Below are positions 1 through 39,145 of a DNA stretch of 64,000 nt, piece by piece. Position 1 is the first letter of the stretch. Every line of letters begins with the position of its first letter. The stretch lies in IMG/VR virus record IMGVR_UViG_3300044644_001125, positions 124,001 to 188,000 of that record. One strand, written 5' to 3'. Position numbers and translations under genes: made by a program. Under the pieces are notes generated by a model. It saw only the letters and a list, made by a program, of their open reading frames with translations. It was not told the DNA's origin and made no database searches.

Positions 1-136
1 TATTATGGTTATGATTGCGAGGCACGTTAGTGCCGAGCTAATCTCTCTTTTTCTGTTATAAGGATAAATAAGTGTAGTCCACGGATTTGGCGATCCTGAC
101 TACTTTAGAACTATTAACTTTAGAGGAGTTCCAACT

Positions 137-1444
137 ATGACTATTTATGCCAAAATTTTAGCAACAAAAGAACACAACGAACGTCAACTAAGAATCTACG
201 TAAAATACATCGCAAAATGTGCAGTATTAAACGAGAATCTTTCAGAAGATACCTACACAGAGCTTCATCATATCTGCCCTAGAGTATTCTTTCCTGAATA
301 CAAAAATCTAAAAGATCATCCTTGGAATGGGATACGATTAACACTAGGCCAACACTTCACAGCCCATTTGATTCTTTCAAACGCATATACGTTTAACGGT
401 GCTATGTCTCAAGCATTTTACCTTATGTGCACACAGAATGGAAGTAAAGGTCAAGCAGTTGTTGATAGGTTCAAAAACTTGAAAACCTACTACGAAGATG
501 CTCGTAACCTAGTCATCAACTCTCAACGCGGTTTAACTATGGTTAAAAACAAAGAAACCGGTGTGTTTGGTCTGATTCCGGTAGAAGAGTACACTGCAAA
601 TCCTGATTTATACGAAACTGCCACTACTGGCATGGTAACAGTTCGCGATATTGAAACCGGTGAAATAATGAGTATGTCATGCGAAATTTACCACGCGAAT
701 AAGGACAAGTTTACTGCCATGAATACTGGAATCGTGCACGTCACAGACAAATTGACTGGTGAGAAGAAACGCATACCATCAGAAGAATATCAAGCAAATA
801 AAGAAAGCTACACAACTTCTGGGTCTGGAGTGACTACTGTTAGAGAATTAGCAACTGGTATTGTAATGAGTGTACCCGTCGATGAGTACTCAAACAATAA
901 AGATCGATTCGAAAGCATTGTTACTGGAACTACAACTGCAAGATTAATAAGCACCGGTGAGATGGTTGTTATCCCAGTAGAAACATACCATGCAAATCGT
1001 GATTTATACGAAACTGCTACTACTGGTCTATTGACTGCAAAAAACAAATTAACAGGTGAATCTGTTAGATTGACCAGAGAGGAATATGAGGCAAATAAGG
1101 ATTTGTATCACTTCCACACATCTGGAGTGTCAGTTATATCGACTATTACCGGTAAGAAATCGCGCATATCATGGGATGAATTTGAAAACAATCCTACCTT
1201 GTATTATAGAGTAAGCAATGTACGGTCAATATACGAACTAGGGAGTTACTCAAAACCAATAGATTATGTAAAACTACCACACGAAGTCAGTAATAAGTCC
1301 AGTTGGGTTCATAACCCAACCACTGGTGAATGTAAAAAGATATCAAAACACGAATACGTTGAATTAGATTGGTTAGCTGGTATCACACCAGAATATAAAA
1401 AACAATTAGAACGTGAACGTTACCATGCTAACAAAGTAAAGTAA
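137..1444 (+). CDS. HNH homing-endonuclease-like protein with seven ~33-aa C-terminal repeats
   Basis: N-terminal ELHHICPR..NGIRLT..QHFTAH HNH motif; repeats of TTG.vtv.d..TGE...i..eeY..N.dlY; TAAATA and GAGGAG upstream. Confidence 0.75.
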   Translation: MTIYAKILATKEHNERQLRIYVKYIAKCAVLNENLSEDTYTELHHICPRVFFPEYKNLKDHPWNGIRLTLGQHFTAHLILSNAYTFNGAMSQAFYLMCTQNGSKGQAVVDRFKNLKTYYEDARNLVINSQRGLTMVKNKETGVFGLIPVEEYTANPDLYETATTGMVTVRDIETGEIMSMSCEIYHANKDKFTAMNTGIVHVTDKLTGEKKRIPSEEYQANKESYTTSGSGVTTVRELATGIVMSVPVDEYSNNKDRFESIVTGTTTARLISTGEMVVIPVETYHANRDLYETATTGLLTAKNKLTGESVRLTREEYEANKDLYHFHTSGVSVISTITGKKSRISWDEFENNPTLYYRVSNVRSIYELGSYSKPIDYVKLPHEVSNKSSWVHNPTTGECKKISKHEYVELDWLAGITPEYKKQLERERYHANKVK

Positions 1445-1451
1445 TTATCTT

Positions 1452-1802
1452 TTAGTACCCTGTCGTGTTGGAATCATTGCGTGGTTCCTGCACTTCAGGT
1501 TTTTGATGGAACTTCTTTCTATCAGGTTTTTCCGGTTGAAACTTTTGAAATTTACCAGAAGTTGATCTTACTGGTGGCGAAATTTTAAATTTTCCATCTC
1601 TTTGATCCGCTGCATTCTTTGCACAAGATTTAGAAAATGAAGGATGACCATTATTTGAAATGCAGTTGGATGGGTCCGTTATTTTGTGTTTTTTGGACCA
1701 GTCAAATCCACTTTTCGACCCGGAACAGTCTTTCGTGCACGGTAATCCGTTGTATGATAACCCTGAATAGGTCAACTCTGTTATAATTTCATGTATTCTC
1801 AT
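1452..1802 (-). CDS. late hypothetical protein with capsid-targeting-like N-terminus
   Basis: MRIHEIITE start; TAAATA at 1808-1813 (minus); CTKDCSG motif. Confidence 0.55.
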   Translation of the reverse strand: MRIHEIITELTYSGLSYNGLPCTKDCSGSKSGFDWSKKHKITDPSNCISNNGHPSFSKSCAKNAADQRDGKFKISPPVRSTSGKFQKFQPEKPDRKKFHQKPEVQEPRNDSNTTGY

Positions 1803-1976
1803 GTTTGTATTTATTCACTAAAAGATAATCAACCCAACTAGCTCGAGCCTATCGGCTCTCGCAAATTCACATAACCCAACAAGCTCGGCACTAACGTGCC
1901 TCGCAATCAACAATTCAACCTATATTATATCACATCTAACATAACCACCCAATAAATACCTATAGGTACTAAAACT

Positions 1977-2732
1977 ATGGAGGGTTTGTACGTGAAGAAA
2001 TTACTAACCGTGGCTATCAATAGCTACAATGTTGCACCGCTACGCGGTTGCGTAAATGACAGCAATAATATACTAAATGTGTGCGCAGCTAATGGTTATC
2101 AAACAGTTCAACTTATTGAAGACCAAGCAACCAAACACAATATTATGACTAAGTTACTAGAAATCAGCAAAGAACTAGTTGACGGAGATAAGTTTATGTT
2201 TCACTACTCTGGTCATGGTTCACAAATTCCATGCAACGATGGCACTGAAACCGATGGTTTAATGGAAGTGCTTTGCCCATTTGATTTAATCAATCCGAAT
2301 GGTAGTTGGAACAATACATTCATCATGGATAACGAGTTACATGATATATTCTGTCAGTTTGCACCAGGTGTTGAAATCGAATGCTTACTTGATTGCTGTC
2401 ATTCAGGTACTGCAACTAGAGATTTAAAACCAAATGTTGCTTATCGTTATATTAGTGCAGGTGTTATCAACTCAGAACCTATGGTTATTAAGTTTAATGT
2501 CTCTTGTACACGTGAAGTTATCTGTTGGTCTGGGTGTAAAGACGAACAAACATCTGCTGATGCATTCTTAGATGGTACGTATCAAGGTGCATTTACAGCA
2601 GCACTGCTAAAAACTACAGGTACTAGACGTGAACGATTTGCAATGCTTACTGCTATTTTAAAGCAAGTTGGCTTTCCGCAAGAGCCGCAGTTAACTTGCG
2701 CGGAATCTCTGTTGGATCAACCTTTGTTTTAA
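1977..2732 (+). CDS. metacaspase / peptidase C14 family
   Basis: LRGCVND, FHYSGHG (His), LDCCHSG (Cys), SGCKDEQTSAD, GAFT motifs; true start may be GTG at 1992. Confidence 0.9.
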   Translation: MEGLYVKKLLTVAINSYNVAPLRGCVNDSNNILNVCAANGYQTVQLIEDQATKHNIMTKLLEISKELVDGDKFMFHYSGHGSQIPCNDGTETDGLMEVLCPFDLINPNGSWNNTFIMDNELHDIFCQFAPGVEIECLLDCCHSGTATRDLKPNVAYRYISAGVINSEPMVIKFNVSCTREVICWSGCKDEQTSADAFLDGTYQGAFTAALLKTTGTRRERFAMLTAILKQVGFPQEPQLTCAESLLDQPLF

Positions 2733-7381: not shown

Positions 7382-7693
7382 TGTTTGTAATTATAACTTA
7401 AAGATAATTGATGTCAAGTTCATGATTGATTGCGAGGCCTGATAGGGCCGAGCCTAATGTTAATGCGTTATTTGCTCTTCTTGATTAATGTAATTACTTG
7501 CGAGGCCTGATAGGGCCGAGCCTTGCTGTATTTTGCGAGGCCTGATAGGGCCGAGCCTTTGTTTAGGTAGATTCTATTATCTTTTAGAAAGGTTGTCAAG
7601 AGGTTTTCTTAGTGGAAGGATAAATAAGGGTGTAACTCGCGGATGGCCGTCCCAGTTACTCTAATGCTTTCAATCTTACAGGAGAACATCAGC

Positions 7694-10039: not shown

Positions 10040-10205
10040 TGAGTGTATTGTAGCTAAAAGATAATTGACTGTCAAGTTGTTTCTAAAAGATAACTAAAAG
10101 ATAATTGATTCATAATGCACCATATACTAAAAGATAATTGGTATATCTGGGACCTAAAAGATAATTGACTGTCAAGATGTTTCTAAAAAATAACTAAAAG
10201 ATAAG
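10040..10205 (-). promoter_or_regulatory. sigma70 promoter region with multiple TAAAAGATAA sites
   Basis: minus strand TTGACAgtcaATTATCTTTTAGctACAAT; six copies of the motif in 165 bp. Confidence 0.65.
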
Positions 10206-10802: not shown

Positions 10803-10821
10803 AGGGAACCTCTTAGAATTG

Positions 10822-12645: not shown

Positions 12646-13929
12646 ATGACCAGCATCATCAAAACCAGTCAACATAGTACCAAGTTTGCCAATACAGGCA
12701 AGCAGGATATATTGTCTGAATTTTTAACCGAATATGATAGAATGATATGGTGGTTTGTTGATTACTTATGGGAAACTAAGATCGTGTGGGGATTAAATCA
12801 AGTACTAGACGTGAAGAATAATCGTTTAGATGTACCTAATTTTATCAATACCGCAGATATAGAATACCATTCCGATTTATCAGCTAGGGCTATAAAATTA
12901 GCATCTAGCGAAGCTCTCGCGTTAGTCAAAGGGCAAACAGAAAAAAGAAGAAAGCAATTCCACGTTCTAGCTAAAAACATGAAAATGGGAACTGTCGGAG
13001 AGGTTAAACGACTTCAATCAAAAATAGATAGCAATCCTCTCACAAAACCAACTACTAATTCCAAAAACCCAAGTGCTAGACTCGATAGTATGTGTTGCAA
13101 GTACATACCAACAGAATCGTCAATATTCGATGGATGGCTTAAACTCAAATCGATTGGTAAGGTATACGGTCATATCTTCATTCCAATTAAGTTAACCAAA
13201 CATTCTAATAAGTTAGCCAAGAAAGGATATTCGATGATGACAACTTGGCGCATTTGTAATAATGTGGTTTCTTCGACTTGGCAAATTGAAAGAAAACCAA
13301 GCAGTGGAACTAAAGTTTTAGGCGCTGACCAAGGAATTAGTACGTGTCTATCACTAAGCGATAGTCAGACCACTGGGGTTTGTAAACATGGACATGATTT
13401 AAAATCAATTATAAATAAGCTATCAAAAAAGAAAAAGGGTAGTAAGGCTTTTGCTAAGGCACAAGCCCATAGAACCAATTATATCAATTGGTCAATTAAC
13501 CAATTAAACCTACAAGATGTCAAAGAACTCAGGCTTGAAAAGTTATTTCAGATGAGGAAGGGTCATAATATAGGTAAACTATTAAGTCATTGGACTTACA
13601 CACAAATCAATGCACAGATAAAAAGCAGATGCGAGGAACTAGGCGTCCTAGTTACCGAGCAATCCGCTGTTTATAGAAGTCAGAGATGCAGTGATTGTGG
13701 TTGGACGCAGAAATCAAATAGGAAGGGAAAGGAGTTTATATGCAAGTCATGTGGCCATCACATCGATGCGGATATAAATGGCGCCCTTAATCACGAAGTG
13801 GACTTATATCCGCTCCCTATGGGATTTCGTCATTTGAATATGAATAGAAAAGGTTTCTTTTGGTATGAAACCCAGCTATTCGATTCAACTGGTCAGGAGA
13901 TTACAGTCCCTGACGTGAAAAATATATAA
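12646..13929 (+). mobile_element. tnpB: TnpB-family RNA-guided nuclease (divergent, no tnpA)
   Basis: RuvC-I GADQG, RuvC-II LEKL, zinc finger SQRCSDCG..CKSCG, RuvC-III DADING. Confidence 0.8.
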
Positions 13930-22868: not shown

Positions 22869-23459
22869 TTGATATGAGCAACGTCATCGATGATAGTCAT
22901 AGTGCCCTTACAACAAATATTCCATTTTGTTTCTCCATACTCAACTGTAGTTGAATCAGTAACTGGTACTGTAATATTTAACGATTTAACCAAATTCTCA
23001 ACGCCATCTTCAAACACACGCCATACTAGTGGTGTTTCGTTATTGTGCTTGGTATTAAATCTAATGTGATATTCTTTCATTTTTGTTTCCTTTAAATAGG
23101 TATTTAATGCTCGCACCTAGCGGTGCTCGCAATATCTAAGTTAAGATACAAGTCGCGAGCACCGCTAGGTGCGAGCCAATGCAGTTATTTTTTCAACAAA
23201 TCAAACAACCCGTACTTAGACTTGGGTATCCACTTAGTTGCATTCGGTCCGCATATCTTTTCACTATACCTAGCAGTAGAGCAGTAACCTATGCTAGCTG
23301 GTGTGGTTTGTCCTAACACTGGATCGTATTCTGCATCAATAACATACAGTAAGCATTTGTAATTGTAACTTTTTGGATTACCAAACGTCATTACCTTATC
23401 AATCAAACTGATACTAGAGTAAACACAATCTTTACACAACAATTCTGATTGTTCAGTCA

Positions 23460-24779: not shown

Positions 24780-24889
24780 TGCTGTTTTCCGTTGTGGTTA
24801 ATGTTGGGTGAATTATATTGTAGTTAGTCTAGGTTGTCAAGTAGTTTTTGTTATTGGCTCGCACCTATCGGTGCTCGCAATCGTGTGGA

Positions 24890-27730: not shown

Positions 27731-28023
27731 TGTAAACCCCTCACTGCAATTACTCGACCGTATACAGATTCTTTGTTACGAATGTCGTCTCTACCGAACA
27801 TCATATGTTTAATCCAAACCGCAGTAGTATTGTACTCGTATACAGCGGAAGACCAATACCAATGATCTTTATATGTATACCCACCTAAATGATATATCTC
27901 GGTTAACTCGGATAAGGTTGGTAATCTCCATCCAGTTTTACCGTTGATCTTAAGTGAAAAGCAATACAAACGAGCATCATCCCAGCTAGCTATTAGTTGC
28001 GTTGGTTCTATTTCAAATTTCAT
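27727..28023 (-). CDS. DUF1566/Lcl-like family protein
   Basis: WDDARLYC..GWRLPT..EL..YWSS..VIAVR. Confidence 0.8.
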   Translation of the reverse strand: MKFEIEPTQLIASWDDARLYCFSLKINGKTGWRLPTLSELTEIYHLGGYTYKDHWYWSSAVYEYNTTAVWIKHMMFGRDDIRNKESVYGRVIAVRGLQ

Positions 28024-28223
28024 TTCATATTCCTACTTGTTTAATTTCGGCCTATTATATAGCATGGTATTAAAATGTCAACCCTCAGTTTACTCCTTAT
28101 TATATAGATACATTACACCGTAGCGAGGAACGAAGTGACGAGCCATTAACCACTTGACAACCCAATCAATCAAATCTATAATATCAACCACTAAATATAC
28201 CAATACCCCAAAGGAGTTACCCA

Positions 28224-29015
28224 ATGCGAATTCACGAAATTGTTGAAGCAATAAAGAAAACCGATACCAAAACAGCTGACATACTCTCGTTCAATACCGA
28301 ACCAGAATTTCAACCAGCACCAGAGAAAGGTACGTCCAGACAAGCAATGCATTATAAGGATGTAACCAAACGTTCTAAAGATCTACAAGACGCAATCAAA
28401 AAGGTTGAAGCAGGTGAAATGTCTAAACAAGAATACGACACGCTTGTCAACAAGGTCAAAGCTGTTTACCCATATGAAGAAGTTCCTATGTATGCGGATA
28501 TTGAAAAAATCAAAGGCGTGATTACAAAAGACAAAACTGAAAAAGTAAAAGACCCAATGGAATTGCTACCAAAAGGATACCCAGTTGGCCTACGATTAGA
28601 CATCCCATCTTACCGTGATAAGAATACTTGGGTGGTTGCTGTTCACGAACAAAAGAAAGGTTGGGATGCTGGAACACCAATAGCCTATACGTCAACCGCA
28701 ATCATAACTAATGCAACTCTAGGTGTACATCCAAACGCGGCAATGAAGATCGCCAAAGGAAATGAAAAAGGTACAATCGCTGTGATGAAAGGTAATTGGG
28801 TACCAATGAGTTCCGAGCAAGCAAAAGCCTATGCAGAAAAAGCAATGAAAAATCCAGCATGGAAACAAGTGGGTATGGATCCAGAACGACATGCTTACTT
28901 CTATGATAGAAACAATATGCAACCTATCGTAGCAGCAGAACAACTAATCCAAGTAGGTGGTTTCGTTATTGCTTACCGCCCAACCTACGCGAATAAAACT
29001 GAATTCCCATACTAA
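28224..29015 (+). CDS. late protein with capsid-targeting-like N-terminus
   Basis: MRIHEIVEA; TAAATA 28192-28197; VGLRLDIP..WVV.VHE and QVGMDP.RH.YFY motifs. Confidence 0.6.
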   Translation: MRIHEIVEAIKKTDTKTADILSFNTEPEFQPAPEKGTSRQAMHYKDVTKRSKDLQDAIKKVEAGEMSKQEYDTLVNKVKAVYPYEEVPMYADIEKIKGVITKDKTEKVKDPMELLPKGYPVGLRLDIPSYRDKNTWVVAVHEQKKGWDAGTPIAYTSTAIITNATLGVHPNAAMKIAKGNEKGTIAVMKGNWVPMSSEQAKAYAEKAMKNPAWKQVGMDPERHAYFYDRNNMQPIVAAEQLIQVGGFVIAYRPTYANKTEFPY

Positions 29016-29170
29016 AAGATAATTAACCTAGGTTGCTTGGTATTATCGCGAGAGCCGGTATTGTTTATATCTGTATCGCGAGCCACGCTAGTGGCGAGCC
29101 ATTAACCACTTGACATTTCAGAAAATCCGTTTATACTACCAGAATCTTAACAAACCTGAGAATACACAAA

Positions 29171-30094
29171 ATGAATATTATCAACGAAATGCTATTTGGC
29201 TCACATCTATACGGATTGGATACTCCAAATTCCGACAAAGACTATAAGGGTATTGTTTTACCAAGTAAAAATCAATTACTACTTGGTAAGACAAGTTTCC
29301 ATGTAGATCACTCCACAAACAACAACGCAAGTAGAAATACAAAAGACGACGTAGATAAAACCTACTACTCACTTCAGTATTTCGTAGACCTAGCTTGCCA
29401 AGGTGAAACCGTTGCACTAGATATGCTACACGCAACAGATGACAAAGTTATCGTTAACTCTGATATTTGGAAATTTCTTGTTGATAACAGACATCGTTTC
29501 TACACCAAAAGCATGAAAGCATATATCGGATATGTTAGAAAACAAGCAGCCAAGTACGGTGCAAAAGGTAGCAGACTAGCAGAAATCGAACGAGTCCTAA
29601 ACATCGCTAATGCGGCAAACGACAACCAAACTGTTGGTGAATTAACCGTCACAGAAAGCGATGTGGTCAAATGGGTAGTGTACAAAGACAACTATTACTT
29701 AGAAGTCTGTGGTAGTAAGTATCAAGACAATCTAAAAATCCCATTCCTAAAACGAGACTTACAAAAACATTTTGATAAGTATGGTGAACGTACCAAGTTA
29801 GCCAAACTCAATGAAGGTATCGATTGGAAAGCCCTCTCGCACGCATTACGCGCGGGTTACCAAGCACGTGATATTTTCACAAAAGGTTACTTTGAATATC
29901 CATTGGCAGAATCCTCAATCCTAATGGACGTAAAACAAGGTAAATTGGACTTTAATGTGGTTGAACCTCTACTGTCAAATCTAGTAGACGAAGTAACCAT
30001 TCTGGCAAACCAATCCAACTACCCAGACAAAGTCGATAGAGAATTCTGGGATGATTTCATCATCGAAAGCCATTTGCAAATTTTCGATAAGTAA
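29171..30094 (+). CDS. Pol-beta nucleotidyltransferase (RlaP / Nuc-transf-like)
   Basis: FGSHLYG..SDKDYKG (GS..DxD), DWKALSHA.R. Confidence 0.85.
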   Translation: MNIINEMLFGSHLYGLDTPNSDKDYKGIVLPSKNQLLLGKTSFHVDHSTNNNASRNTKDDVDKTYYSLQYFVDLACQGETVALDMLHATDDKVIVNSDIWKFLVDNRHRFYTKSMKAYIGYVRKQAAKYGAKGSRLAEIERVLNIANAANDNQTVGELTVTESDVVKWVVYKDNYYLEVCGSKYQDNLKIPFLKRDLQKHFDKYGERTKLAKLNEGIDWKALSHALRAGYQARDIFTKGYFEYPLAESSILMDVKQGKLDFNVVEPLLSNLVDEVTILANQSNYPDKVDREFWDDFIIESHLQIFDK

Positions 30095-30119
30095 TCGAAT
30101 TGAACCTAATAGGAAATCT

Positions 30120-30395
30120 ATGAACTTTGAAATAGCACCAGTTTTCATCAAAGCAACTTGGGACGAAGCCCGAATGTATTGTTTTGCTCTTAATGTCAAT
30201 GGTAAGACCGGTTGGAGATTACCTACGATAGCTGAACTACATGAGATGCTAAGTCGAGGATTAATCGAACCCGGAAATTACTGGTCGTCTGAAGTTACTA
30301 CCAACAACCACATCAAGTATTTGTCACCAGTCAGTGTTAGGTTCGGCGTAAATGAATACCAATTAGGCGTTTATCCAGTTCGTGATTTAGATTAA
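30120..30395 (+). CDS. mini DUF1566/Lcl-like family protein
   Basis: FEIAP..WDEARMYC..GWRLPT..YWSS..YPVRD. Confidence 0.75.
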   Translation: MNFEIAPVFIKATWDEARMYCFALNVNGKTGWRLPTIAELHEMLSRGLIEPGNYWSSEVTTNNHIKYLSPVSVRFGVNEYQLGVYPVRDLD

Positions 30396-30703
30396 ATATT
30401 GACTTACTTTCTTAATCTGTTACAATAGCATTTTGATAGCGTGCGAGGCGAGATAGCCGCCGAGCATCTTGACAATATTAATATCGCGAGCACCGCTAGG
30501 TGCGAGTATCTTGACAATATTAATATCGCGAGCACCGCTAGGTGCGAGCCAATATATGTTTGTTTGCGGAGTATCTTGACAATATTAATGTTGCGAGCAC
30601 CGCTAGGTGCGAGCCAATGTAAAACTAATATGAATTAACGATTGACTTACTTTCTTATCAGGGTTATACTAACCTTTCTTACAATTTAAAACTTAGGAGT
30701 TAC

Positions 30704-31303
30704 ATGATGATGGTACCAATGGTAGTAGAGAACACAAGCAAAGGCAGGGTTTTTGATATTTTTAGCATGTGCCTCAAAGAAAACGTGGTGTTTATAAATG
30801 GACCTATTGCAACCGAGATGAGTCATGTTGTTGCTGCACAGTTATTATATCTTGAATCAGTTGACCCAGAAAAACCCATTTATATTTATATCAACTCATT
30901 CGGTGGGGAGTGCCGAAGTGGATTATTTTTATACGATACGATTCAGCACATAAAAAATCCAATAAAAACAGTAGCTTGCGGAGCGGTTTGTAGTATGGGA
31001 AGTTTCTTGGCTAATTCTGGTTCGCCTGGCCATAGGTATATTCTACCAAATGCAGCGGTGATGATTCATGCGGTCCGTGGGGGTTCTAACGGAAGTGTTC
31101 ACGATGCTATGATTCAAATGGAAGAAATGGTAAAATTAAACGATAAACTAACCGAATTATACGTGAAACACAATTCAAAAGGTAAAACAATCGAAGATTT
31201 CAAACAAGCGATGTCTCGCGATTATTGGTTAAGTGCAGAAGAAGCAATCGAATTTGGATTAGTTGATTCCATAATGACTTCACGAAAAGACTTACCACTC
31301 TAA
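30704..31303 (+). CDS. clpP: ClpP protease
   Basis: VPMVVE, AQLLYL, YINS.GG, CSMGS (Ser), MIH (His), RDYW..AEEA.EFGLVD. Confidence 0.9.
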   Translation: MMMVPMVVENTSKGRVFDIFSMCLKENVVFINGPIATEMSHVVAAQLLYLESVDPEKPIYIYINSFGGECRSGLFLYDTIQHIKNPIKTVACGAVCSMGSFLANSGSPGHRYILPNAAVMIHAVRGGSNGSVHDAMIQMEEMVKLNDKLTELYVKHNSKGKTIEDFKQAMSRDYWLSAEEAIEFGLVDSIMTSRKDLPL

Positions 31304-31307
31304 CTGA

Positions 31308-31337
31308 GAAAGGCCACCGCAAGGTGGCCTTTCTTTT
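31308..31337. terminator. bidirectional terminator
   Basis: AAGGCCACC-GCAA-GGTGGCCTT between convergent genes. Confidence 0.8.
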
Positions 31338-31340
31338 ATC

Positions 31341-32819
31341 CTATTTCTTACTAGGCTTTTTGTTCAACTTCTTTTCGAGTTTCTTGGCTTCCTTCGCTAT
31401 TCGTTTTTCTTCTTTAACTATAGCAGTCCAATCATTTTCCCACATAACAACCAAGTTGTATCCAAAATCAATTATCTCTTGGTCCATTCTACAAGAATGT
31501 TCGTACAATTCACCAAATGTTTTTCCATGTTTTATACTAAAAGATGATGGATCAAATACTGATGGGTTTCCATGATAATAATCGCCGTGAAATTGATATA
31601 TTGTATTCGTTTCAATGCAATACCCATCAACTGGTCTTGTTCGTTTCTCCGGTAATCTAAATTCTCTAACCAGTTCAAGTCCTAAACTATCCAACCATGC
31701 GTTAGCAGGTTTAGAACCATTAACACAACTATTCTTTACCTTTGGATTTTCTTTCTCGCATTCAGGGCATCCATACTTGTAGTGTTTACCAACTAGTATA
31801 GAAAAATCACCATGCACTGGGCAGGTAACTATAATAGGTACATTTTTAATATCACCACATAGTTCCACCTTCGAATAATCATATTTGAAATCATGAATCA
31901 AATTTAACTTTTCCACCAATTCTGGAACCTTTAAACTAACACGCTCACCCATCTCACGTCTGCTACAGGTATTACAACCCCAGCCGGTTAGATGTGATCT
32001 CGGGGATATTTCAAAATCACCATGCTCTTTGCAGGTAACAATTATTGTCGTTCCACGCGATTTTACATATACAGTTTTATCATATTCGTACCGGAAATCA
32101 TGTTTCTCATTCGCCTTGGCTACATATTCCTCAGTTGTTGTACGTCTATGTGGTCTTTCAACACCTTTAGTTTGTTCAGATATTGAATCTTTACCACATT
32201 TCGCACATCCATAGTAGGTGTGAGCATGTGCGGTTTGTGTGAATATCCCATGTTTTTCACATTCGATATTTATTTTCGTAGTACTATCGACATAATAGCT
32301 TTCAATATCTGGGTATGTATACTTTCCTTCGTGCTTTTCTTCGAATCTAACAAGCATTTCATCTAATGGTACTTTGCGACGTTCACTGCATTTCTCGCCT
32401 TTGCATTTTCCACACCCATGTTTATTAATATGGTCTGAAGGTTTTTGTAAAAAAGGCCCATGAACTAAGCAGTGTATCTCCACCTTCTTGTGCATGTGTT
32501 CATATTTCACCTGCGAGTAGTCAAATTTAGGATTTTCTATATTATCATGTGCTTCATTGAACTTTTCAATGACGTCTTCTTGGGACATTCTACTGTTTTT
32601 ACTATGCGCATCATTAGCACACTGCTTGCACCCATACATAGAGCGAACATGATCATACAATCTCTGTTCAAATAAACCATGAACTGGGCAATGTATCAAT
32701 ACCAGGCTATCTTTCCCAATATATTCGACACTTGAGTAATCGAATTTTCCATTGAACTTATTAGTTGCTTCTGCTATCATTCTTGCGGCGTAAGATTCGC
32801 CTCTGCTAAATACTGTCAT
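31341..32819 (-). CDS. homing-type endonuclease: five C..HG.F..C..C zinc repeats plus Vsr/PD-(D/E)xK-like domain
   Basis: YDYS.V.Y..I.C.VHG.F..GC..C repeats; VDGY..QFHGDYYHG..WEND. Confidence 0.75.
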   Translation of the reverse strand: MTVFSRGESYAARMIAEATNKFNGKFDYSSVEYIGKDSLVLIHCPVHGLFEQRLYDHVRSMYGCKQCANDAHSKNSRMSQEDVIEKFNEAHDNIENPKFDYSQVKYEHMHKKVEIHCLVHGPFLQKPSDHINKHGCGKCKGEKCSERRKVPLDEMLVRFEEKHEGKYTYPDIESYYVDSTTKINIECEKHGIFTQTAHAHTYYGCAKCGKDSISEQTKGVERPHRRTTTEEYVAKANEKHDFRYEYDKTVYVKSRGTTIIVTCKEHGDFEISPRSHLTGWGCNTCSRREMGERVSLKVPELVEKLNLIHDFKYDYSKVELCGDIKNVPIIVTCPVHGDFSILVGKHYKYGCPECEKENPKVKNSCVNGSKPANAWLDSLGLELVREFRLPEKRTRPVDGYCIETNTIYQFHGDYYHGNPSVFDPSSFSIKHGKTFGELYEHSCRMDQEIIDFGYNLVVMWENDWTAIVKEEKRIAKEAKKLEKKLNKKPSKK

Positions 32820-33288
32820 ATTGATGTCTCCTCTATAGACGTTGATTAGTAGTTCAAGATATTTCCCGATATCTTTTACTATGAGTATTTATCTTTTTGA
32901 ATCTAAAAGATAATGAAACCCAAGGAACCCGACTTAGATCGGGTTTCTTTTTGTCTAAAAGATAATGCCTTAAGGCTCGCACCTAGCGGTGCTCGCACCT
33001 CACAAATCCACCCACAATAGCTCCTCACAATATCCACCGTATACTTACATTGGCTCGCACCTAGCGGTGCTCGCGACCTCACAAATCCACCCACAATAGC
33101 TCGTCGCTAACGCTCCTCGCATCACTAAAATAAAATCCAACCTATCGGCACTCGCATCACTAAAATACAAACCAGCAACCTCACAAATCTAACCCACATC
33201 AAACCAACACCAAAAATACAAACAAATCCACTTGACATTCAACAAATCTCTAAGTACAATACGTAAAAAATACATTATAGGAACAAGC

Positions 33289-33561
33289 ATGGCAATTGAA
33301 ATAGCACCTGAAGAATACTGGAAAAAACTCGAATTTAATGATGCTAGGTTATATTTGTTTTCGTTGGTAATAGATAATCATGCAAATTGGCGATTTCCCA
33401 CACAAGATGAATGGCTTCACGAGATATACGACTTTACATCAGAATATAAGCAATTCTTTTCTGATTTTTGGCTACTAGAAGACTTGGCTTGCGTTACACC
33501 AGACAAATTAAATGAGTGGAAAGATCCGCTGTTTATAACCATACCAGTAAGAGACTTATAA
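33289..33561 (+). CDS. array unit 1
   Basis: MAIEIAPEEY..WRFPT..IPVRD. Confidence 0.75.
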   Translation: MAIEIAPEEYWKKLEFNDARLYLFSLVIDNHANWRFPTQDEWLHEIYDFTSEYKQFFSDFWLLEDLACVTPDKLNEWKDPLFITIPVRDL

Positions 33562-33833
33562 TGGCAAGACTAGACATAAAATTTGAACTCGCACCAGAGA
33601 AATACTGGAATTGTATGACGCATGAGGAAATCCGACTCTACTTGTTCTCATTGAATATTGATGGTACAACAGACTGGCGAGTACCCACTAACTACGAAAT
33701 TCTACAATTAAAAGGCATATGTTGGCAATCCGGTGAACTTGTTTGGTATAATGAAGCTGTTCTATATTTTAACAACCATCCAAGTAACGTCAGTGCATAC
33801 TACAAGTTAATTCCAGTGAGAGATAAAAGATGA
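33561..33833 (+). CDS. array unit 2
   Basis: FELAPEKY..DWRVPT..IPVRD; TAATG overlap. Confidence 0.75.
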   Translation: MARLDIKFELAPEKYWNCMTHEEIRLYLFSLNIDGTTDWRVPTNYEILQLKGICWQSGELVWYNEAVLYFNNHPSNVSAYYKLIPVRDKR

Positions 33834-34141
33834 TTGAAATAGCACCCAAAGAATATGAAATCCGATCAAGCTGGGACGATGCCCGTTTGTATTGTTTTGC
33901 TCTTCGCATAGATGGTAAAACTGGTTGGAGGTTGCCAACTGTTAAGGAGTTGAATAGTATCTGGGCTATGCCCGGCTGCGATTTTGCTAGATGGTATTAC
34001 TGGTCATCTGAAGAAGGTGACATTGGGTATGCTATTGATGTAGATTTTAATCGACAAGGTATAGATTATAAGTCATCGCCTGAGAATAAGGGATATGATG
34101 ATAACTTAGTTAGACCAGTAAGAGATCTAAAAGATGATTGA
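33830..34141 (+). CDS. array unit 3
   Basis: MIEIAP..GWRLPT..YWSS..RPVRDLKDD. Confidence 0.8.
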   Translation: MIEIAPKEYEIRSSWDDARLYCFALRIDGKTGWRLPTVKELNSIWAMPGCDFARWYYWSSEEGDIGYAIDVDFNRQGIDYKSSPENKGYDDNLVRPVRDLKDD

Positions 34142-35473: not shown

Positions 35474-35717
35474 ACCCAAACTCGAAGTAGCACCTGAAGA
35501 GTACTGGATAGAAACCGAGGTGACTAATCTTATATTTTATCTTATGTTATTGGACATTGATGGTAACCGGGATTGGCGGGTCCCAACACTTGACGAAACT
35601 CGAGTTGTAAGAGTTCATGGCATTCGTGGGATGTGGAATTCTAATGATACGGTTGATAACATTTCCCACAAAATTAAATATTGGTTAATCCCAGTACGAG
35701 ATCTAAAAGATGATTGA
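35466..35717 (+). CDS. array unit 10
   Basis: IDGNRDWRVPT..PVRDLKDD. Confidence 0.75.
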   Translation: MIEPKLEVAPEEYWIETEVTNLIFYLMLLDIDGNRDWRVPTLDETRVVRVHGIRGMWNSNDTVDNISHKIKYWLIPVRDLKDD

Positions 35718-35949
35718 AGTAGCACAGAAAAACCAATGGCTCTCAGTTAGTCAAGCCGATGCTAAACTTCGGATGTTTGTTCTGGGTGATGGTTGGAGGT
35801 TTCCGACCTTCGTGGAAACCCACAGTCTGCAATTTCCAATGATGGTTTCACCAGTTTGGAATACAGATACTATTAATAACCCTGAGTTAGATAAGCATCA
35901 TGATGTTCGACGGGTGTTTATCCCAGTACGAGATCTAAAAGATGATTGA
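35710..35949 (+). CDS. array unit 11
   Basis: LGDGWRFPT..PVRDLKDD. Confidence 0.75.
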   Translation: MIEVAQKNQWLSVSQADAKLRMFVLGDGWRFPTFVETHSLQFPMMVSPVWNTDTINNPELDKHHDVRRVFIPVRDLKDD

Positions 35950-36181
35950 AGTAGCACAGAAAAAGCAATGGATTCCCCTTGTACGAGACGATGTTAAACT
36001 TCGTGTGTTTTTACTAGGTGATGGGTGGAGATTACCAACCTTTGACGAAACTCGACTGCTGCAATTTCCAACGATGACCACACCTTACTGGTATGCGGAT
36101 ATCATTAATAATCCAGAGTTAGATAAGGGTCGTAGCAATCGTCGATTACTTATCCCAGTACGAGATCTAAAAGATGATTGA
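35942..36181 (+). CDS. array unit 12 (close paralog of unit 11)
   Basis: MIEVAQK..LQFP..INNPELDK shared with unit 11. Confidence 0.75.
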   Translation: MIEVAQKKQWIPLVRDDVKLRVFLLGDGWRLPTFDETRLLQFPTMTTPYWYADIINNPELDKGRSNRRLLIPVRDLKDD

Positions 36182-36407
36182 AATAGCACCTGTTGAATAT
36201 CACAAAAAATTAACGTATACGGATGCCAAGTTATATTGTTTTTCTTTGAATATAGATGGTAAGGTTGGTTGGAGATTACCAACACAGAAAGAATTTTTCA
36301 ATAACCGAAACATATATGGTTGGTATGCTGATGGTGTAGGTGAACGAAGTGATCGATTAACTAATCTTGGAACTATTATCCCAGTACGAGATCTAAAAGA
36401 TGATTGA
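36174..36407 (+). CDS. array unit 13
   Basis: YCFSLNIDGKVGWRLPT..PVRDLKDD. Confidence 0.75.
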   Translation: MIEIAPVEYHKKLTYTDAKLYCFSLNIDGKVGWRLPTQKEFFNNRNIYGWYADGVGERSDRLTNLGTIIPVRDLKDD

Positions 36408-36609
36408 AATAGGTCCTAGAACAAATACTCCATTATCCAAAGAGGATGCGGAATTTTACTGTTTTTGCCTTGGTGACGGTTGGCGATTAGCAACAGCGGA
36501 TGAGTTTTACTCGATGCTTGGTAGTATTATTGGTTGTTACGATTCTTTTAGTGACCCAAATACCGTAAAATTATTCTTCACACCAGTACGAGATCTAAAA
36601 GATGATTGA
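36400..36609 (+). CDS. array unit 14
   Basis: YCFCLGDGWRLAT..PVRDLKDD. Confidence 0.75.
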   Translation: MIEIGPRTNTPLSKEDAEFYCFCLGDGWRLATADEFYSMLGSIIGCYDSFSDPNTVKLFFTPVRDLKDD

Positions 36610-36811
36610 GATAGGTGAACAATCAGAATTTAAAATGACCTACGACGAAGCAGTTATGTATTGTTTTTGTTTAGGTGATGGTTGGCGATTACCAAGTCAA
36701 GAAGAATACCACAAATACATCCCACCCTATTTTGGTGTAACTTGGTATCAAGAACATGGTTTGTGGTTTAATTTACCAGTAATCCCAGTGCGAGATATAA
36801 TCGATGATTGA
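36602..36811 (+). CDS. array unit 15
   Basis: YCFCLGDGWRLPS..PVRDIIDD. Confidence 0.75.
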   Translation: MIEIGEQSEFKMTYDEAVMYCFCLGDGWRLPSQEEYHKYIPPYFGVTWYQEHGLWFNLPVIPVRDIIDD

Positions 36812-37040
36812 GCAAGCACCCAAAGAATACGAAAAAGAGTTGACGTGGAATGCAGCAATCTTCTACTGTTTCTCACTTAATATTGAAGGTGATGTTGGTT
36901 GGAGATTACCGACTTATGAAGAAATACGTACTATCGTTGGTTACACGAATACGTGGAAATATTGGTACGGTGAAGTCAGAGATGACAGTGAGACTAAAAG
37001 ATATCGAGTAATCCCAGTGCGAGATCTAAAAGATGATTGA
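36804..37040 (+). CDS. array unit 16
   Basis: YCFSLNIEGDVGWRLPT..PVRDLKDD. Confidence 0.75.
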   Translation: MIEQAPKEYEKELTWNAAIFYCFSLNIEGDVGWRLPTYEEIRTIVGYTNTWKYWYGEVRDDSETKRYRVIPVRDLKDD

Positions 37041-37248
37041 AATCGGAAAAGCATCAGAATTTGGCATAAGTTATGACGAGGCAGTTTTGTATTGTTTTTG
37101 TTTGGGTGATGGTTGGAGGTTACCAACACAAGCGGAATACTACGCTAATCAGGAATCAGTTGGTGCATGCTGGTATCAAGGCGACCCGGCAAGCCATTTG
37201 GGTAAACTGTGGCCAGTAGTCCCAGTGCGAGATATAAAAGCGGATTGA
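37033..37248 (+). CDS. array unit 17
   Basis: YCFCLGDGWRLPT..PVRDIKAD. Confidence 0.75.
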   Translation: MIEIGKASEFGISYDEAVLYCFCLGDGWRLPTQAEYYANQESVGACWYQGDPASHLGKLWPVVPVRDIKAD

Positions 37249-37445
37249 ATCAATCGCGAGTGTCACCTAAATATCGGTATGAAATTCTTAATTTACGTCG
37301 CACTCACTTACGGTTTAGCATGGATATTAACCACGGTTATTGATCAAATCCAGCACTACAACATTCCTACCAAACACTGGTATGAGTTTGGTTACCTATT
37401 ATCTATTATTGTATTCACACACATAATTGCTTACTTTGTACGAAA

Positions 37446-38231
37446 ATGACTAGAATATACTACGCATCAGATTTACATTTAGAACATCGCCAATTGGATT
37501 ACGGGATTATACATCCGATTCCAAATAGCATTTTAGTATTAGCTGGTGATATTGTTCCTACTGCGAGTCTAATATTCCAACAGAATCACCCAGATCCTAC
37601 TAGTACTGATTTTGTTGACTTTTTTGAGATTATTTCGTTTAAGTACAAACATGTCATTTATGTTGCTGGGAATCATTCATTATATGGATCCCAATATAAC
37701 AGCATTGGTAACTTAAAACGCGCATTGGCTGAGTATACCAATATCCATGTTTTAGATTGCGAATCGATTACCTTAGAAGGTATTGATTTTTACGGTGGTA
37801 CGTGCTGGACTGACTTCAACCGAGAAGATCCACAAACCATGATGTTAGCACCAAGAACGTTAATGGACTTTCGTGTTATTAAAGAAGGCACTGGTAAGTT
37901 CTTACCTAGCACTGCGTTAGAATTACACAAACAATACTTGGTTGGATTAGACAAGTTCTTAAATACTACTAAGAACAAGACAGTTGTTGTGAGTCATCAT
38001 TCTCCATCACATGCGACTATTAATCCAATCTACAAAGACCAATACCACATGAATGGATTGTTCTCGTCGGATTTGACCGAATACATGGAAGGGATTGATT
38101 ATTTCATCTATGGTCACATGCATTCAGGCTTAGACGTGGTACATGGTGACTGCCACGTTATTACAAACCCTCGTGGGTATCCTCACGAACCAAGTCACCG
38201 CAATTTTCAAATGAGGTATTTTGACTTATGA
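37446..38231 (+). CDS. calcineurin-like metallophosphoesterase
   Basis: SDLH, LAGDI, GNH, HH.P, GHMH, NPRGY. Confidence 0.9.
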   Translation: MTRIYYASDLHLEHRQLDYGIIHPIPNSILVLAGDIVPTASLIFQQNHPDPTSTDFVDFFEIISFKYKHVIYVAGNHSLYGSQYNSIGNLKRALAEYTNIHVLDCESITLEGIDFYGGTCWTDFNREDPQTMMLAPRTLMDFRVIKEGTGKFLPSTALELHKQYLVGLDKFLNTTKNKTVVVSHHSPSHATINPIYKDQYHMNGLFSSDLTEYMEGIDYFIYGHMHSGLDVVHGDCHVITNPRGYPHEPSHRNFQMRYFDL

Positions 38232-38415
38232 CCATGCATTATACAAAACATCGTGATGTTAAGAAATCGTCATTAATAGATGGCTATGGTTCTGTATCTG
38301 GAATGGAAGGGCCATTCAGAGATAAACAAGATAAGGTTGTTTACTACGACCCATTGCAAGGTAAGTACCTTTCTGCTAAGGAAGTTTTTAAGTACTCTGC
38401 AGTTCACTAAAAGAT

Positions 38416-38440
38416 AAGGCACCGACATAGGTGCCTTTTT
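38416..38440. terminator. terminator between convergent genes
   Basis: AAGGCACC/GGTGCCTT stem plus T-run. Confidence 0.75.
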
Positions 38441-39030
38441 TAGTTAAAGTTGATTGGTAAATCGTAGTCAACAATCTTATCAGTTGGTTTGATCTGTTGC
38501 ACGTCTGAGATTTTCTGTAAGTTGAAAATAACGACCATCATTTCATTCCACCCAAAAGCATTTGGTACTAGTAGATAATCGATGCCATTGTCTACAAAGA
38601 ACTGACTTAAGTTAACAGTATCGGTTGCCTTAATTGCTTTTTCATTCAAAATGACGTTATTGAATACATACGCTGGTATCATGTTATTTTGATTGTACTT
38701 CTCAAGTCGTTGCATAATGTCGTTACGTTTTGCTTTAGTTACGAATTGGTTAACAAACCCAAGTGCCTTATCATGTTCGACATGCGATTTATTCGCATCC
38801 GTGCCTTTAGTCAAGGTAAGCAGATATAGTTTTCGTGAACCTTTGCTGTATTTTCTGGCAGTGTCGTAATGGGTGGTTGCGTACAAACCAGCACCATATT
38901 CAAATCTACCGGTTTTTTGTGGAATTAAGACTAAGTCACTGGTTAAGTTTCCACCATGCCACAAACTCATGGTTCCTGGCTCTTTTGATAATTCAACTGT
39001 GTTTTCTGTTACAAACTCGGATATTCGCAT
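38440..39030 (-). CDS. putative ADP-ribosyltransferase-like protein with capsid-targeting-like N-terminus
   Basis: LWHG..GAGLYAT..A.KY..E.VI H-Y-E-like pattern; MRISEFVTE; TAAATA 39057-39062. Confidence 0.55.
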   Translation of the reverse strand: MRISEFVTENTVELSKEPGTMSLWHGGNLTSDLVLIPQKTGRFEYGAGLYATTHYDTARKYSKGSRKLYLLTLTKGTDANKSHVEHDKALGFVNQFVTKAKRNDIMQRLEKYNQNNMIPAYVFNNVILNEKAIKATDTVNLSQFFVDNGIDYLLVPNAFGWNEMMVVIFNLQKISDVQQIKPTDKIVDYDLPINFN

Positions 39031-39145
39031 TTAGTTACTCTCTTGTTAGTATCCGGTATTTATGGCTCGCACCTAGCGGTGCTCGCTACCAAACAAAATC
39101 CAATTAAACCTTGACATCCCTTATCTTTTAGCTATAATACGACCC

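What the first reader, a model, noticed from the sequence alone, without database searches (positions are those of the whole stretch)
17..39086. Dispersed 22-nt hairpin family GCGAG-N4-GNTA-N4-CGAGC with tandem G.A mismatches and covarying stem
Seen: 19 copies. Plus strand: 17, 7432, 7500, 7535, 23155, 28123, 29078, 30443, 30486, 30528, 30593. Minus strand: 1841, 1883, 23109, 24857, 32975, 33053, 33099, 39065. None seen beyond 39.1 kb. Inner stems covary (GCAC/GTGC, CACC/GGTG, AGCC/GGCT, CCAC/GTGG, GCCT/GGGC) with loops GTTA, GCTA, GATA or GAA. The outer GCGAG/CGAGC arms pair only via tandem G.A mismatches, so the fold is strand-specific. Almost all copies lie on the sense strand upstream of a promoter; those at 23109 and 39065 abut TAAATA, and those at 28123 and 29078 are both followed by CATTAACCACTTGACA. 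Known: sheared GA pairs and GNA/GNNA loops stabilise ssDNA hairpins (N4 vRNAP promoters; ColE1 primosome assembly sites are GAGCG-rich). Inference: an ssDNA signal for priming, transcription or recombination, or a REP-like mobile unit.
Basis: partly seen in the sequence, partly recalled or inferred. Interest (0 to 1): 0.75.

Follow-up and report, generated by a model that had tools for sequence, protein, structure and literature searches.

The report
REP-like hairpin family in jumbo phage
A 22-base DNA unit that folds into one specific hairpin is scattered about 50 times between the genes of an uncultured 327-kb lake phage and its relatives, where its position, orientation and 13 fixed bases are kept while its inner stem is swapped; this is a phage counterpart of bacterial REP elements whose reader is still unknown.

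Summary
The motif GCGAG-N4-GNTA-N4'-CGAGC occurs 16 times exactly in the window, against 0 expected. The window lies in a 327-kb lake-metagenome jumbo phage with a T4 gp23-type capsid protein (PA5oct/RaK2 group).

Genome-wide there are about 52 copies, and 51 of them are intergenic. The four inner pairs covary: 99.6% of cells are paired and at least 11 different stems occur. Both strands fold, but the tandem G.A strand is more stable as RNA (-11.8 versus -8.8 kcal/mol).

Related contigs at 68-99% nucleotide identity keep copies at orthologous sites. Orientation is conserved in 56 of 56 comparisons, but the inner stem is often replaced. One exact 22-nt presence/absence allele and one core swap with identical flanks exist.

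The family was not found in PA5oct, a Vibrio relative, the cultured-phage collection or 401 Burkholderiaceae genomes. No HUH, tyrosine or serine recombinase and no T7-like RNA polymerase was found.

Copies lie at transcription-unit boundaries. Their orientation follows transcription only weakly and does not follow GC skew.

Verdict: a lineage-specific, REP/PeSL-like boundary hairpin. It is not an N4-type promoter or a priming signal. Whether it acts as RNA or as single-stranded DNA, and what binds it, remain unresolved.

The parts
17..38 (+). Copy with stem GCAC/GTGC and loop GTTA. It is the second of two copies upstream of the HNH gene 137-1444.
   Evidence: 39.8 bits; the relative L369 carries a different core between identical flanks
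1841..1862 (-). Copy with stem AGCC/GGCT and loop GATA.
1883..1904 (-). Copy with stem GCAC/GTGC and loop GTTA. It is inverted relative to the copy at 17.
7432..7453 (+). Copy with stem GCCT/GGGC (G-T wobble). First of a three-copy array.
7500..7521 (+). Second copy of the three-copy array.
7535..7556 (+). Third copy of the three-copy array.
23109..23130 (-). Copy with stem CACC/GGTG and loop GCTA, followed by TAAATAC. One half of an outward-facing inverted pair.
23155..23176 (+). Partner of the inverted pair. It is antisense to both flanking genes and lies 8 nt from a stop codon.
24857..24878 (-). Copy with stem CACC and loop GATA. It lies 16 nt upstream of a 12/12 consensus sigma70 promoter (24840-24812, minus strand).
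28123..28143 (+). Degenerate 21-nt copy with a GAA loop and 2 of 4 inner pairs. It sits between divergent consensus promoters (28081 minus strand, 28154 plus strand).
   Evidence: 20 bits
29042..29061 (+). Truncated copy. This stretch is deleted in a related population in run X2.
29078..29099 (+). Copy with stem CCAC/GTGG. It lies 10 nt upstream of the promoter at 29110-29137. The orthologue in L335/L345 has stem TGCC.
30443..30465 (+). Degenerate 23-nt copy. It is the first of a four-copy array, about 10 nt downstream of the predicted start of the promoter at 30399-30426.
   Evidence: 12.6 bits
30486..30507 (+). Copy ending in CGAGT, giving a G-T closing pair.
30528..30549 (+). Copy within the 42-nt repeat unit.
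30593..30614 (+). Last copy of the array. It lies 27 nt upstream of the promoter at 30642-30670, which drives clpP.
32975..32996 (-). Copy followed by the 12-mer and an intrinsic terminator.
33053..33074 (-). Middle copy of the array.
33099..33120 (-). Copy whose inner stem holds a second tandem G.A (GAGC/GCGA).
   Evidence: 28.9 bits
39065..39086 (-). Copy followed by TAAATAC. It lies 24 nt upstream of the opposite-strand promoter at 39111-39138.

Best explanation
The family is a lineage-specific set of miniature extragenic palindromes, a phage analogue of bacterial REP elements and of the stem-loop part of T4-type PeSL cassettes.

Anatomy (shown): each copy is a discrete 22-nt unit. On one strand it folds into G-C, C-G, a tandem sheared G.A ('CGAG block'), G-C, four free but paired base pairs, and a GNTA loop.

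Genomic behaviour (shown): copies lie only between genes, at the edges of transcription units in the variable, early-gene parts of the genome. They sit after stop codons or terminators, upstream of sigma70 or late promoters, or just before ribosome-binding sites. Position, orientation and the 13 fixed bases persist across relatives down to about 70-75% nucleotide identity. The inner stem is repeatedly replaced by another fully paired variant.

Mechanism (inferred): the folded single strand is read by a factor specific for both sequence and shape, which contacts the CGAG block and the G..TA loop. The working form is most likely the transcript. There the hairpin would punctuate read-through and polycistronic RNAs, acting as a barrier to exonucleases, an attenuator or insulator, or a protein operator. 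This role tolerates either orientation because both strands fold.

DNA-level consequences (inferred): because the copies are repeated palindromes, they also provoke short-patch conversion, exact loss or gain, and array expansion. This contributes to cassette shuffling, as proposed for PeSLs.
For: The copies are real and structured. RNA fold energy is -11.8 kcal/mol on the sense strand and -8.8 on the antisense strand. With DNA parameters it is -5.5 and -4.7.

51 of 52 copies are intergenic, although only 14.1% of the genome is intergenic (P=2e-42). Copies cluster at 80-163, 224-261 and 319-327 kb, among small genes and sigma70 promoters, and are absent from the 164-224 kb block.

Six of the 8 best promoters in window 22-40 kb have a copy within 27 nt upstream of the -35 box. 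The late-type motif TAAATA[CA] lies downstream on the same strand 9 times, against 1.6 expected.

Retention at orthologous sites is 25/39, 38/42 and 30/36 in the <80%, 80-90% and >=90% identity bins. Orientation is conserved in 56/56 comparisons, while the stem is the same in only 7/17, 10/17 and 18/22.

Compensatory changes occur at single orthologous sites: TGCC to AGCC, and G-C to A-T at the 'invariant' pair at genome 94472.

Indel and swap alleles exist, and array copy number varies between relatives.

The PeSL papers describe stem-loops next to sigma70 promoters in hyperplastic regions, associated with indels and degraded or duplicated copies (PMC2839356, PMC4122927). The CGAG block is a structurally characterised, stable motif in DNA (PMC10085684).
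Against: No transcript ends could be measured. The one metatranscriptome holding the region gave only contigs without direction.

Orientation follows transcription only weakly: 17-21 sense versus 9 antisense in informative contexts, and p=0.23 against the local gene strand. That is unexpected for a purely RNA cis-element.

The loop is GNTA, not one of the extra-stable RNA loops such as GNRA or UNCG.

Copies are not interchangeable with intrinsic terminators: a canonical terminator is present in 27% of regions with a sense copy, against 21% overall. Copies also lack a U-tract.

No candidate binding protein was found.

This phage has a separate, more PeSL-like repeated promoter-leader cassette that mostly lacks the hairpin.
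Confidence: 0.5

Rival explanations
1. The unit works as folded single-stranded DNA or as an extruded cruciform arm. It would be the recognition site of a hairpin-specific DNA enzyme that excises, inserts or exchanges the 22-nt unit or the cassettes between units, in the manner of REP/RAYT or integron attC sites. On this reading the fixed bases reflect what the mobilising machinery needs, not a function at each locus.
For: An exact 22-nt presence/absence allele exists without target duplication or microhomology. A core swap occurs between identical flanks. One variant sits at more than 20 unrelated loci. Neighbouring copies share a variant within a genome but carry a different one in a relative. 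One copy has an inverted core. Inverted pairs and arrays occur. The c-GNNA-g loop and the Y-GA-R tandem are the stable DNA forms (PMC10085684; loop stability from my own knowledge of the DNA tetraloop literature). TnpB elements move in this lineage although the genome holds no tnpA, so a transposase supplied in trans is conceivable.
Against: No Y1 HUH, tyrosine or serine recombinase was found in a 92%-complete genome. The ends of the resident TnpB elements carry a different hairpin. The pattern is at chance level in 401 Burkholderiaceae genomes. Only one exact empty site was found among about 75 orthologous pairs, and cores diverge no faster than flanks (0.016 versus 0.020 differences per nt). 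Position and orientation are conserved in 56/56 comparisons, which fits locus-level function or conversion better than repeated re-insertion.
Confidence: 0.25
2. The unit is an RNA operator for one dedicated regulatory protein, for example a boxB/N-type antiterminator or a translational repressor, acting on early transcripts.
For: Invariant loop and internal-loop bases with a free helix are typical of protein-RNA operators. Seven of 8 copies next to an intrinsic terminator lie on its 5' side. Tight hairpin-SD-ATG spacing (14-28 nt) occurs in the sense orientation only, 11 cases to 1.
Against: Five of those 11 cases are paralogous duplicates. Antisense copies are conserved in relatives. About 50 sites and arrays of up to 4 copies are unlike known nut sites. 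No RegA or L7Ae homologue was found.
Confidence: 0.15
3. The unit is an N4-type single-stranded hairpin promoter or a primosome/priming signal.
Against: No T7/N4-like RNA polymerase Pfam hit was found. The relative PA5oct depends on host RNA polymerase (PMC7318152). Distance to genes and promoters is variable. Both orientations occur. There is no link to GC skew. Tandem arrays and copies placed directly after stop codons do not fit either role.
Confidence: 0.03
4. The unit is a double-stranded operator for a dimeric DNA-binding protein.
For: It is a near-palindrome located close to promoters.
Against: The half-sites are kept asymmetric (GA versus TC) in all copies. The inner 4 bp covary instead of being conserved. 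G-T wobbles are tolerated on one strand only. The operator-like role is better filled by the separate 12-mer.
Confidence: 0.03

Closest known systems
REP / BIME / REPIN elements of bacterial chromosomes
   Same: Both are short extragenic imperfect palindromes in tens of copies. Both occur solo, as inverted doublets and in tandem clusters. Both sit at operon boundaries and after stop codons. Mismatches give the hairpin a strand identity. Sub-families of variants exist. The element is transcribed and usable in either orientation.
   Different: This unit is 22 nt rather than about 35 nt. It has no GTAG foot. No RAYT (Y1 HUH) gene is present in the genome. It lies in a virus genome. Its inner stem is hypervariable yet always paired. 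Its orientation is fixed at orthologous sites.
PeSL (promoter-early stem-loop) cassettes of T4-type phages (PMC2839356, PMC4122927)
   Same: Both are intergenic stem-loops just upstream of sigma70-type early promoters in hyperplastic regions of large myoviruses. Both are associated with indels, duplicated or degraded copies and cassette differences between close relatives.
   Different: PeSL stem-loops are G-run/C-run terminator-like stems of loose sequence, always placed upstream of the promoter. Here the unit has 13 fixed bases with non-canonical pairs. It occurs with or without a promoter and in either orientation. Ordinary intrinsic terminators exist separately. The phage belongs to the PA5oct/RaK2 group, not the Tevenvirinae.
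Integron attC sites
   Same: Both are folded single-strand sites in which conserved outer boxes flank a variable but paired centre, and unpaired bases mark the strand. Both lie between small gene cassettes.
   Different: No integrase was found. The unit is 22 nt rather than 57-141 nt. The cassettes here carry their own promoters. Recombination at these sites has not been shown.
N4 virion-RNA-polymerase hairpin promoters
   Same: Both are small, unusually stable DNA hairpins upstream of early genes.
   Different: N4 hairpins have a 3-nt loop and lie at a fixed distance from the start on the template strand, read by a dedicated polymerase. None of these features is met here.
DNA 'CGAG block' hairpins (PMC10085684) and the d(GCGAGC)2 / r(GGCGAGCC)2 duplexes
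   Same: They share the identical local structure: C-G, sheared G.A, A.G, G-C formed by two CGAG tracts.
   Different: Those are structural models or a human promoter repeat. They are not a dispersed genomic family.

Membership tests
REP/RAYT (REPIN) system | Many extragenic palindromic copies, including inverted doublets | tested here: met
   About 52 copies, 51 of them intergenic. Inverted pairs occur at window 23109/23155, genome 245257/245329 and 106849/106876, and in relatives.
REP/RAYT (REPIN) system | A cognate RAYT (Y1 HUH transposase) gene in the same genome | tested here: not met
   The PF01797 six-frame search of the 92%-complete genome gave no match at E<=1, while the control genomes matched.
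REP/RAYT (REPIN) system | Conserved GTAG-type tetranucleotide at the foot of the hairpin | tested here: not met
   The flanks show only a weak T at -2 and a C at +1.
PeSL cassette | Stem-loop immediately upstream of a sigma70-like early promoter in hyperplastic regions | tested here: inconclusive
   7 copies lie 9-27 nt upstream of a same-strand consensus promoter, and about 10 lie upstream of an opposite-strand one. The remainder have no strict promoter nearby.
PeSL cassette | Association with insertions, deletions and replacements between close relatives | tested here: met
   Relevant loci are at genome 23.5 kb, 28.5 kb, 226.4 kb, 322.4 kb and 324.2 kb.
PeSL cassette | The stem-loop terminates transcription; mini-circles form between cassettes | not testable with these tools
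   This needs reporter assays and inverse PCR on infected cells. No U-tract follows the hairpin.
Intrinsic terminator | G+C-rich hairpin followed by a U-tract | tested here: not met
   The 20 nt downstream are A-rich (38% A, 29% T). Canonical terminators occur separately and are not replaced by the hairpin.
N4-type hairpin promoter | Phage-encoded single-subunit RNA polymerase that reads the hairpin | tested here: not met
   PF00940 gave no match. The caveat is that this family's controls were silent and N4 vRNAP is divergent. The relative PA5oct uses host polymerase (PMC7318152).
N4-type hairpin promoter | Stem of 5-7 bp with a 3-nt loop, at a fixed distance from the transcription start | tested here: not met
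   The loop is 4 nt in 50 of 52 copies, and distances to starts and promoters are variable.
Integron attC | Tyrosine recombinase IntI | tested here: not met
   PF00589 gave no match, while all 14 control genomes matched.
IS200/IS605 ends or PATE | The hairpin matches the LE/RE hairpins of resident elements, and TnpA is present | tested here: not met
   The TnpB element ends carry a CTCGGC/GCCGAG hairpin with a 6-nt loop, unlike this unit. No TnpA was found.
Rfam RNA families | Match to a curated covariance model | tested here: not met
   Nothing was found on the hairpins at gathering threshold. Only a 15.9-bit chance hit appeared at E<=10.

The most novel reading that the evidence does not exclude
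The 22-nt hairpin could be a self-contained mobile or recombination unit of a virus genome, the smallest known of its kind. It would be excised, inserted and exchanged precisely as a folded single strand by an enzyme that none of the searched families represents. That enzyme could be phage-encoded and unrecognised, or supplied in trans by the host, as must be the case for the lineage's tnpA-less TnpB elements. Alternatively the unit serves as an attC-like crossover point for gene-cassette exchange in jumbo phages.
Probability: 0.15. Interest if true: 0.85.

Novelty: new variant of a known kind. Interest (0 to 1): 0.6.

Why it matters
Dispersed, structure-conserved hairpin families are well known in bacterial chromosomes but are hardly described in phages. 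This case is unusually clean. The unit is a defined 22-mer with 13 fixed bases and a textbook CGAG block, over a free but always paired helix. Its position and orientation are conserved across a clade while the core is exchanged. That gives a tractable handle on two open problems. The first is how transcription units are insulated and shuffled in the hyperplastic regions of giant phages. The second is how small palindromes spread and stay uniform without a recognisable transposase. It also provides a ready-made bait, as a DNA or RNA oligonucleotide with G.A-to-Watson-Crick controls, for fishing out an unknown nucleic-acid-binding protein.

Tried and rejected
Sequencing runs: read laying on window 28001-34000 with one metatranscriptome and three DNA runs gave only Logan contigs without direction. 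The apparent joints were paralogous loci and assembly breaks at the repeats, so nothing could be said about RNA ends.

Cultured-phage collection: megablast and short-query blastn found no relatives carrying the unit.

A sample of 401 Burkholderiaceae genomes was at control level. The true host is unknown, so this does not exclude a host REP.

Enzyme and binder searches: no hit for Y1 HUH, tyrosine recombinase, serine recombinase, L7Ae, RegA or T7-like RNA polymerase.

Terminator equivalence: rejected, because the hairpin shows no anticorrelation with canonical terminators and has no U-tract.

Other ideas tested:
- Rho-site idea: upstream flanks are G/T-rich and C-poor.
- Extension of the stem into the flanks: not supported.
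- CRISPR-repeat or anti-CRISPR decoy idea (the TGCC variant resembles a type I-F repeat hairpin): dropped, because the conserved parts differ and the spacing is irregular.
- Link to HNH genes: the three genes behind multi-copy arrays are not paralogues.
- Gene conversion among paralogous cassettes as the cause of the exact 22-nt indel: unlikely, because the left flank is unique to that locus.

Analogous families in relatives: PA5oct and Vibrio phage 2.275.O have no analogous family and no high-copy 11-mers.

Full report
**What the window is.** The window is bases 124001-188000 of a single 327,256-bp contig. The contig is best represented in lake-water metagenomes. It encodes a T4 gp23-type major capsid protein (PF07068, E=3e-96). 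The closest cultured matches for that protein are Sinorhizobium phage Phosso, Vibrio phage 2.275.O and the Pseudomonas PA5oct group, at 68-72% amino-acid identity. Related contigs join its end to its start. G+C content is 38%. PA5oct is reported to depend on the host RNA polymerase and to use TTGAC/TATAATA promoters (PMC7318152). This genome likewise holds 235 near-consensus sigma70 promoters, concentrated at 70-170 kb. It also has a strongly gene-oriented TAAATAC motif 16-38 nt before start codons, 62 sense against 3 antisense, which I read as a late promoter.

**Check of the observation.** GCGAG-N4-GNTA-N4-CGAGC has 16 exact matches in the window, against 0.00 expected.
- 30486 differs by one base.
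- 28123 and 30443 are degenerate copies.
- A covariance model built from 80 copies and run without filters returns the same 19 places plus a truncated copy at 29042. It finds nothing beyond 39.1 kb.

Genome-wide there are about 52 copies.
- 47 carry all 13 fixed bases, and 46 of those have four perfect inner pairs.
- The six copies with one or two changes in fixed positions are all fully paired.
- One of these six, at genome 94472, changes the 'invariant' G-C next to the G.A pairs to A-T on both sides.

On 71 distinct sequences, 99.6% of cells pair. All four inner pairs show double changes. No shuffle, and no version with the pairing partners slid out of register, comes close. The same architecture occurs once in PA5oct and five times in the Vibrio phage, and those few hits share no sequence.

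**Structure.** As RNA the unit folds as ((..(((((....)))))..)) at -11.8 kcal/mol. The complementary strand reaches -8.8, or -7.6 for the G-T wobble variant. With DNA parameters the values are -5.5 and -4.7. The outer element is two CGAG tracts facing each other. This is the 'CGAG block' (C-G, sheared G.A, A.G, G-C) solved by NMR in DNA hairpins (PMC10085684). From my own knowledge, the same tandem is sheared in r(GGCGAGCC)2, and c-GNNA-g is among the most stable DNA tetraloops. Structure alone therefore does not decide between RNA and DNA. The third loop base is always T, which suggests a specific contact.

**Where the copies lie.** 51 of 52 are intergenic, although only 14.1% of the genome is (P=2e-42). 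They cluster at 80-163, 224-261 and 319-327 kb, and none lies in the 164-224 kb block. They occupy the edges of transcription units in four kinds of place:
- 0-14 nt after stop codons;
- next to intrinsic terminators, with 7 of 8 such copies having the terminator on their 3' side;
- 9-27 nt upstream of the -35 box of consensus promoters, which holds for six of the eight best promoters in window 22-40 kb;
- upstream of TAAATA[CA] (9 observed against 1.6 expected), or 5 nt before a Shine-Dalgarno sequence.

The 20 nt upstream are T-rich and the 20 nt downstream are A-rich. The copies are not substitutes for terminators.

A second, far more abundant motif is the 12-mer CTAAAAGATAAT, with 139 exact copies. 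It has a polar relation to the hairpin: on the strand where it reads ATTATCTTTTAG, the hairpin is always on its 5' side, in 19 of 19 cases.

**Orientation.** In divergent intergenic regions any orientation counts as 'sense to the downstream gene', so only co-directional contexts are informative. There the ratio is 17-21 sense to 9 antisense. Over 43 independent loci, copy strand is unrelated to GC skew (p=0.76) and only weakly related to local gene strand (odds ratio 2.3, p=0.23).

**Relatives.** The unit is found in IMG/VR contigs and in 56 low-GC metagenome loci that align to this genome at 68-99% identity. Further stems occur there (TCGC, CCGC, GCGT, and GCCC beside the wobble form GCCT), and all four loop N bases are seen.
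- Copies in relatives map within 150 nt of a genome copy in 25/39 cases (flanks <80% identical), 38/42 (80-90%) and 30/36 (>=90%).
- In 56 unique orthologous comparisons the orientation is conserved in all 56, including the antisense loci.
- The inner stem is identical in only 7/17, 10/17 and 18/22 comparisons for the same three identity bins, and the replacement is always another paired variant.
- Single compensatory steps also occur, for example TGCC/GGCA to AGCC/GGCT at genome 326632 against L050.

**Turnover.**
- At genome 324198 the unit is present here and in L238 but exactly absent in L097 and L236. Those two contigs come from two different samples. The flanks are joined as ...atctt|caatagg..., with no duplication or microhomology. 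The left flank is unique in the genome, so conversion from a paralogue is unlikely.
- At 226366 the unit is present here and in L004 (with a different stem) but missing, imprecisely, in L239 and L240, whose flanks are 97-98% identical.
- At window 17 the core and the two following bases differ from L369 at 7 of 12 core positions, while at least 25 nt on each side are identical.
- Neighbouring copies share one variant within a genome and another variant in a relative.
- Arrays vary in copy number.
- One copy has an inverted core.
- At 23.5 and 28.5 kb at least seven relatives carry copies that this genome lacks.
- L021 and L097 carry an extra promoter-ORF-terminator cassette bracketed by copies at the 322.4 kb site.
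- Among close pairs, cores are nevertheless as stable as flanks.

**What it is not.** No Y1 HUH, tyrosine or serine recombinase, L7Ae, RegA or T7-like polymerase was detected. The resident TnpB elements end in a different hairpin. No Rfam family matches. PA5oct, the Vibrio phage and the cultured-phage collection lack the unit. 401 Burkholderiaceae genomes are at control level.

**Interpretation.** The combination fits a REP-like element, and in phage terms the stem-loop component of PeSL-type cassettes (PMC2839356, PMC4122927). The relevant features are:
- a discrete unit that is strictly extragenic and lies at unit boundaries;
- solo copies, inverted pairs and tandem arrays;
- variant sub-families;
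- conserved position and orientation, with concerted replacement of the core.

It differs from both models in having a fixed non-canonical core. It differs from REPs in lacking a RAYT. The long-term retention of 13 bases plus pairing at orthologous sites argues for a reader of the folded strand.

I favour the transcript as the working form, with confidence 0.5 for the overall model. The reasons are its higher stability as RNA, tolerance of G-U pairs on one strand only, and placement inside read-through RNA and leaders. However, the weak coupling to transcription direction, the DNA-optimal loop and the precise indel keep a single-stranded-DNA reading alive, at 0.25. The steps from 'conserved folded unit at boundaries' to 'stabiliser, attenuator or operator' and to 'recombination hot spot' are inferences. 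No RNA end, protein or recombination event was observed directly.

Noticed in passing
29 exact copies in the window (e.g. 1818, 4232, 10054-10154, 32903, 32955 on the + strand; 1444, 7576, 24893 on the - strand). 139 genome-wide.: The 12-mer CTAAAAGATAAT is the most repeated word in the genome. The 11-mer core occurs 169 times and the variant CTAAAAGATGA 49 times. It is mostly intergenic and lies in both orientations relative to genes. It often forms an inverted pair bracketing the -35 of a sigma70 promoter, with ATTATCTTTTAG running into the -10. It looks like an operator or 'stoperator'-type site for a regulator of early promoters. PA5oct and the Vibrio relative have nothing like it.
   Followed up: partly
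window 41335-41485 (+): Full-length match to Rfam RF01718, Polynucleobacter-1 sRNA (69.7 bits against a gathering score of 37), inside the phage genome. This may be a hint to a freshwater Burkholderiales host, or a captured host RNA.
   Followed up: no
window 12646-13929 (+), 48502-49779 (-), 58523-59791 (+); relative L057 7664-9174: Three TnpB (OrfB_IS605 / Cas12f-TNB) genes are present, with no tnpA anywhere in the genome. In relative L057 a 1.5-kb copy sits exactly after the ATG start codon of the gene at genome 41164, which is an empty site here. The element is therefore mobile in this lineage.
   Followed up: partly
genome-wide; in the window e.g. after 23109, 39065, 1841 and 7535: TAAATAC lies 16-38 nt before start codons, 62 times in sense and 3 in antisense. 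It is a late-promoter-like motif reminiscent of T4 TATAAATA.
   Followed up: partly
window 137-1444 (+) with 1452-1802 (-); window 30704-32819: An HNH homing-endonuclease gene plus a small ORF is bracketed by inverted hairpin arrays of a single variant (GCAC-GTTA). clpP plus a DUF723 gene is bracketed by inverted CACC-GCTA arrays. Both arrangements resemble terminal inverted repeats.
   Followed up: partly
window 33830-34141 and about 30 paralogues (genome 97, 109, 149-158, 225-240, 308-309, 324-326 kb): A large paralogous family of ~100-aa Lcl_C/DUF1566 proteins (GWRLP motif). Many of the genes are separated by the hairpin and a 12-mer variant.
   Followed up: partly
window 30704-31303, 1977-2732, 29171-30094, 42918-44027, 23460-24779: The phage encodes ClpP, a caspase-like C14 peptidase, an RlaP-type nucleotidyltransferase, a T4 RnlA-like RNA ligase and an ATP-dependent DNA ligase. 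A ClpA/B-like AAA protein lies at genome 240530-242107.
   Followed up: no
genome 78-101 kb (outside the window; loci L230, L231): About 30 copies of a promoter-plus-leader cassette (TTGACA-N17-TAnnnT followed by ...ACCTTAACAAAGCACTACGGAG... and ATG). This is a more classical PeSL-type repeat, and it mostly lacks the hairpin.
   Followed up: no
genome 319102-319123 (+), locus L235 about 1102-1123: A copy with normal outer arms but an inverted core (CCGC-TATC-GCGG), 24 nt downstream of a normal copy.
   Followed up: no
window 35684-36189: A 232-nt tandem repeat of 2.2 copies at 78% identity. It contains a 12-mer variant and the start of Lcl_C-type genes.
   Followed up: no
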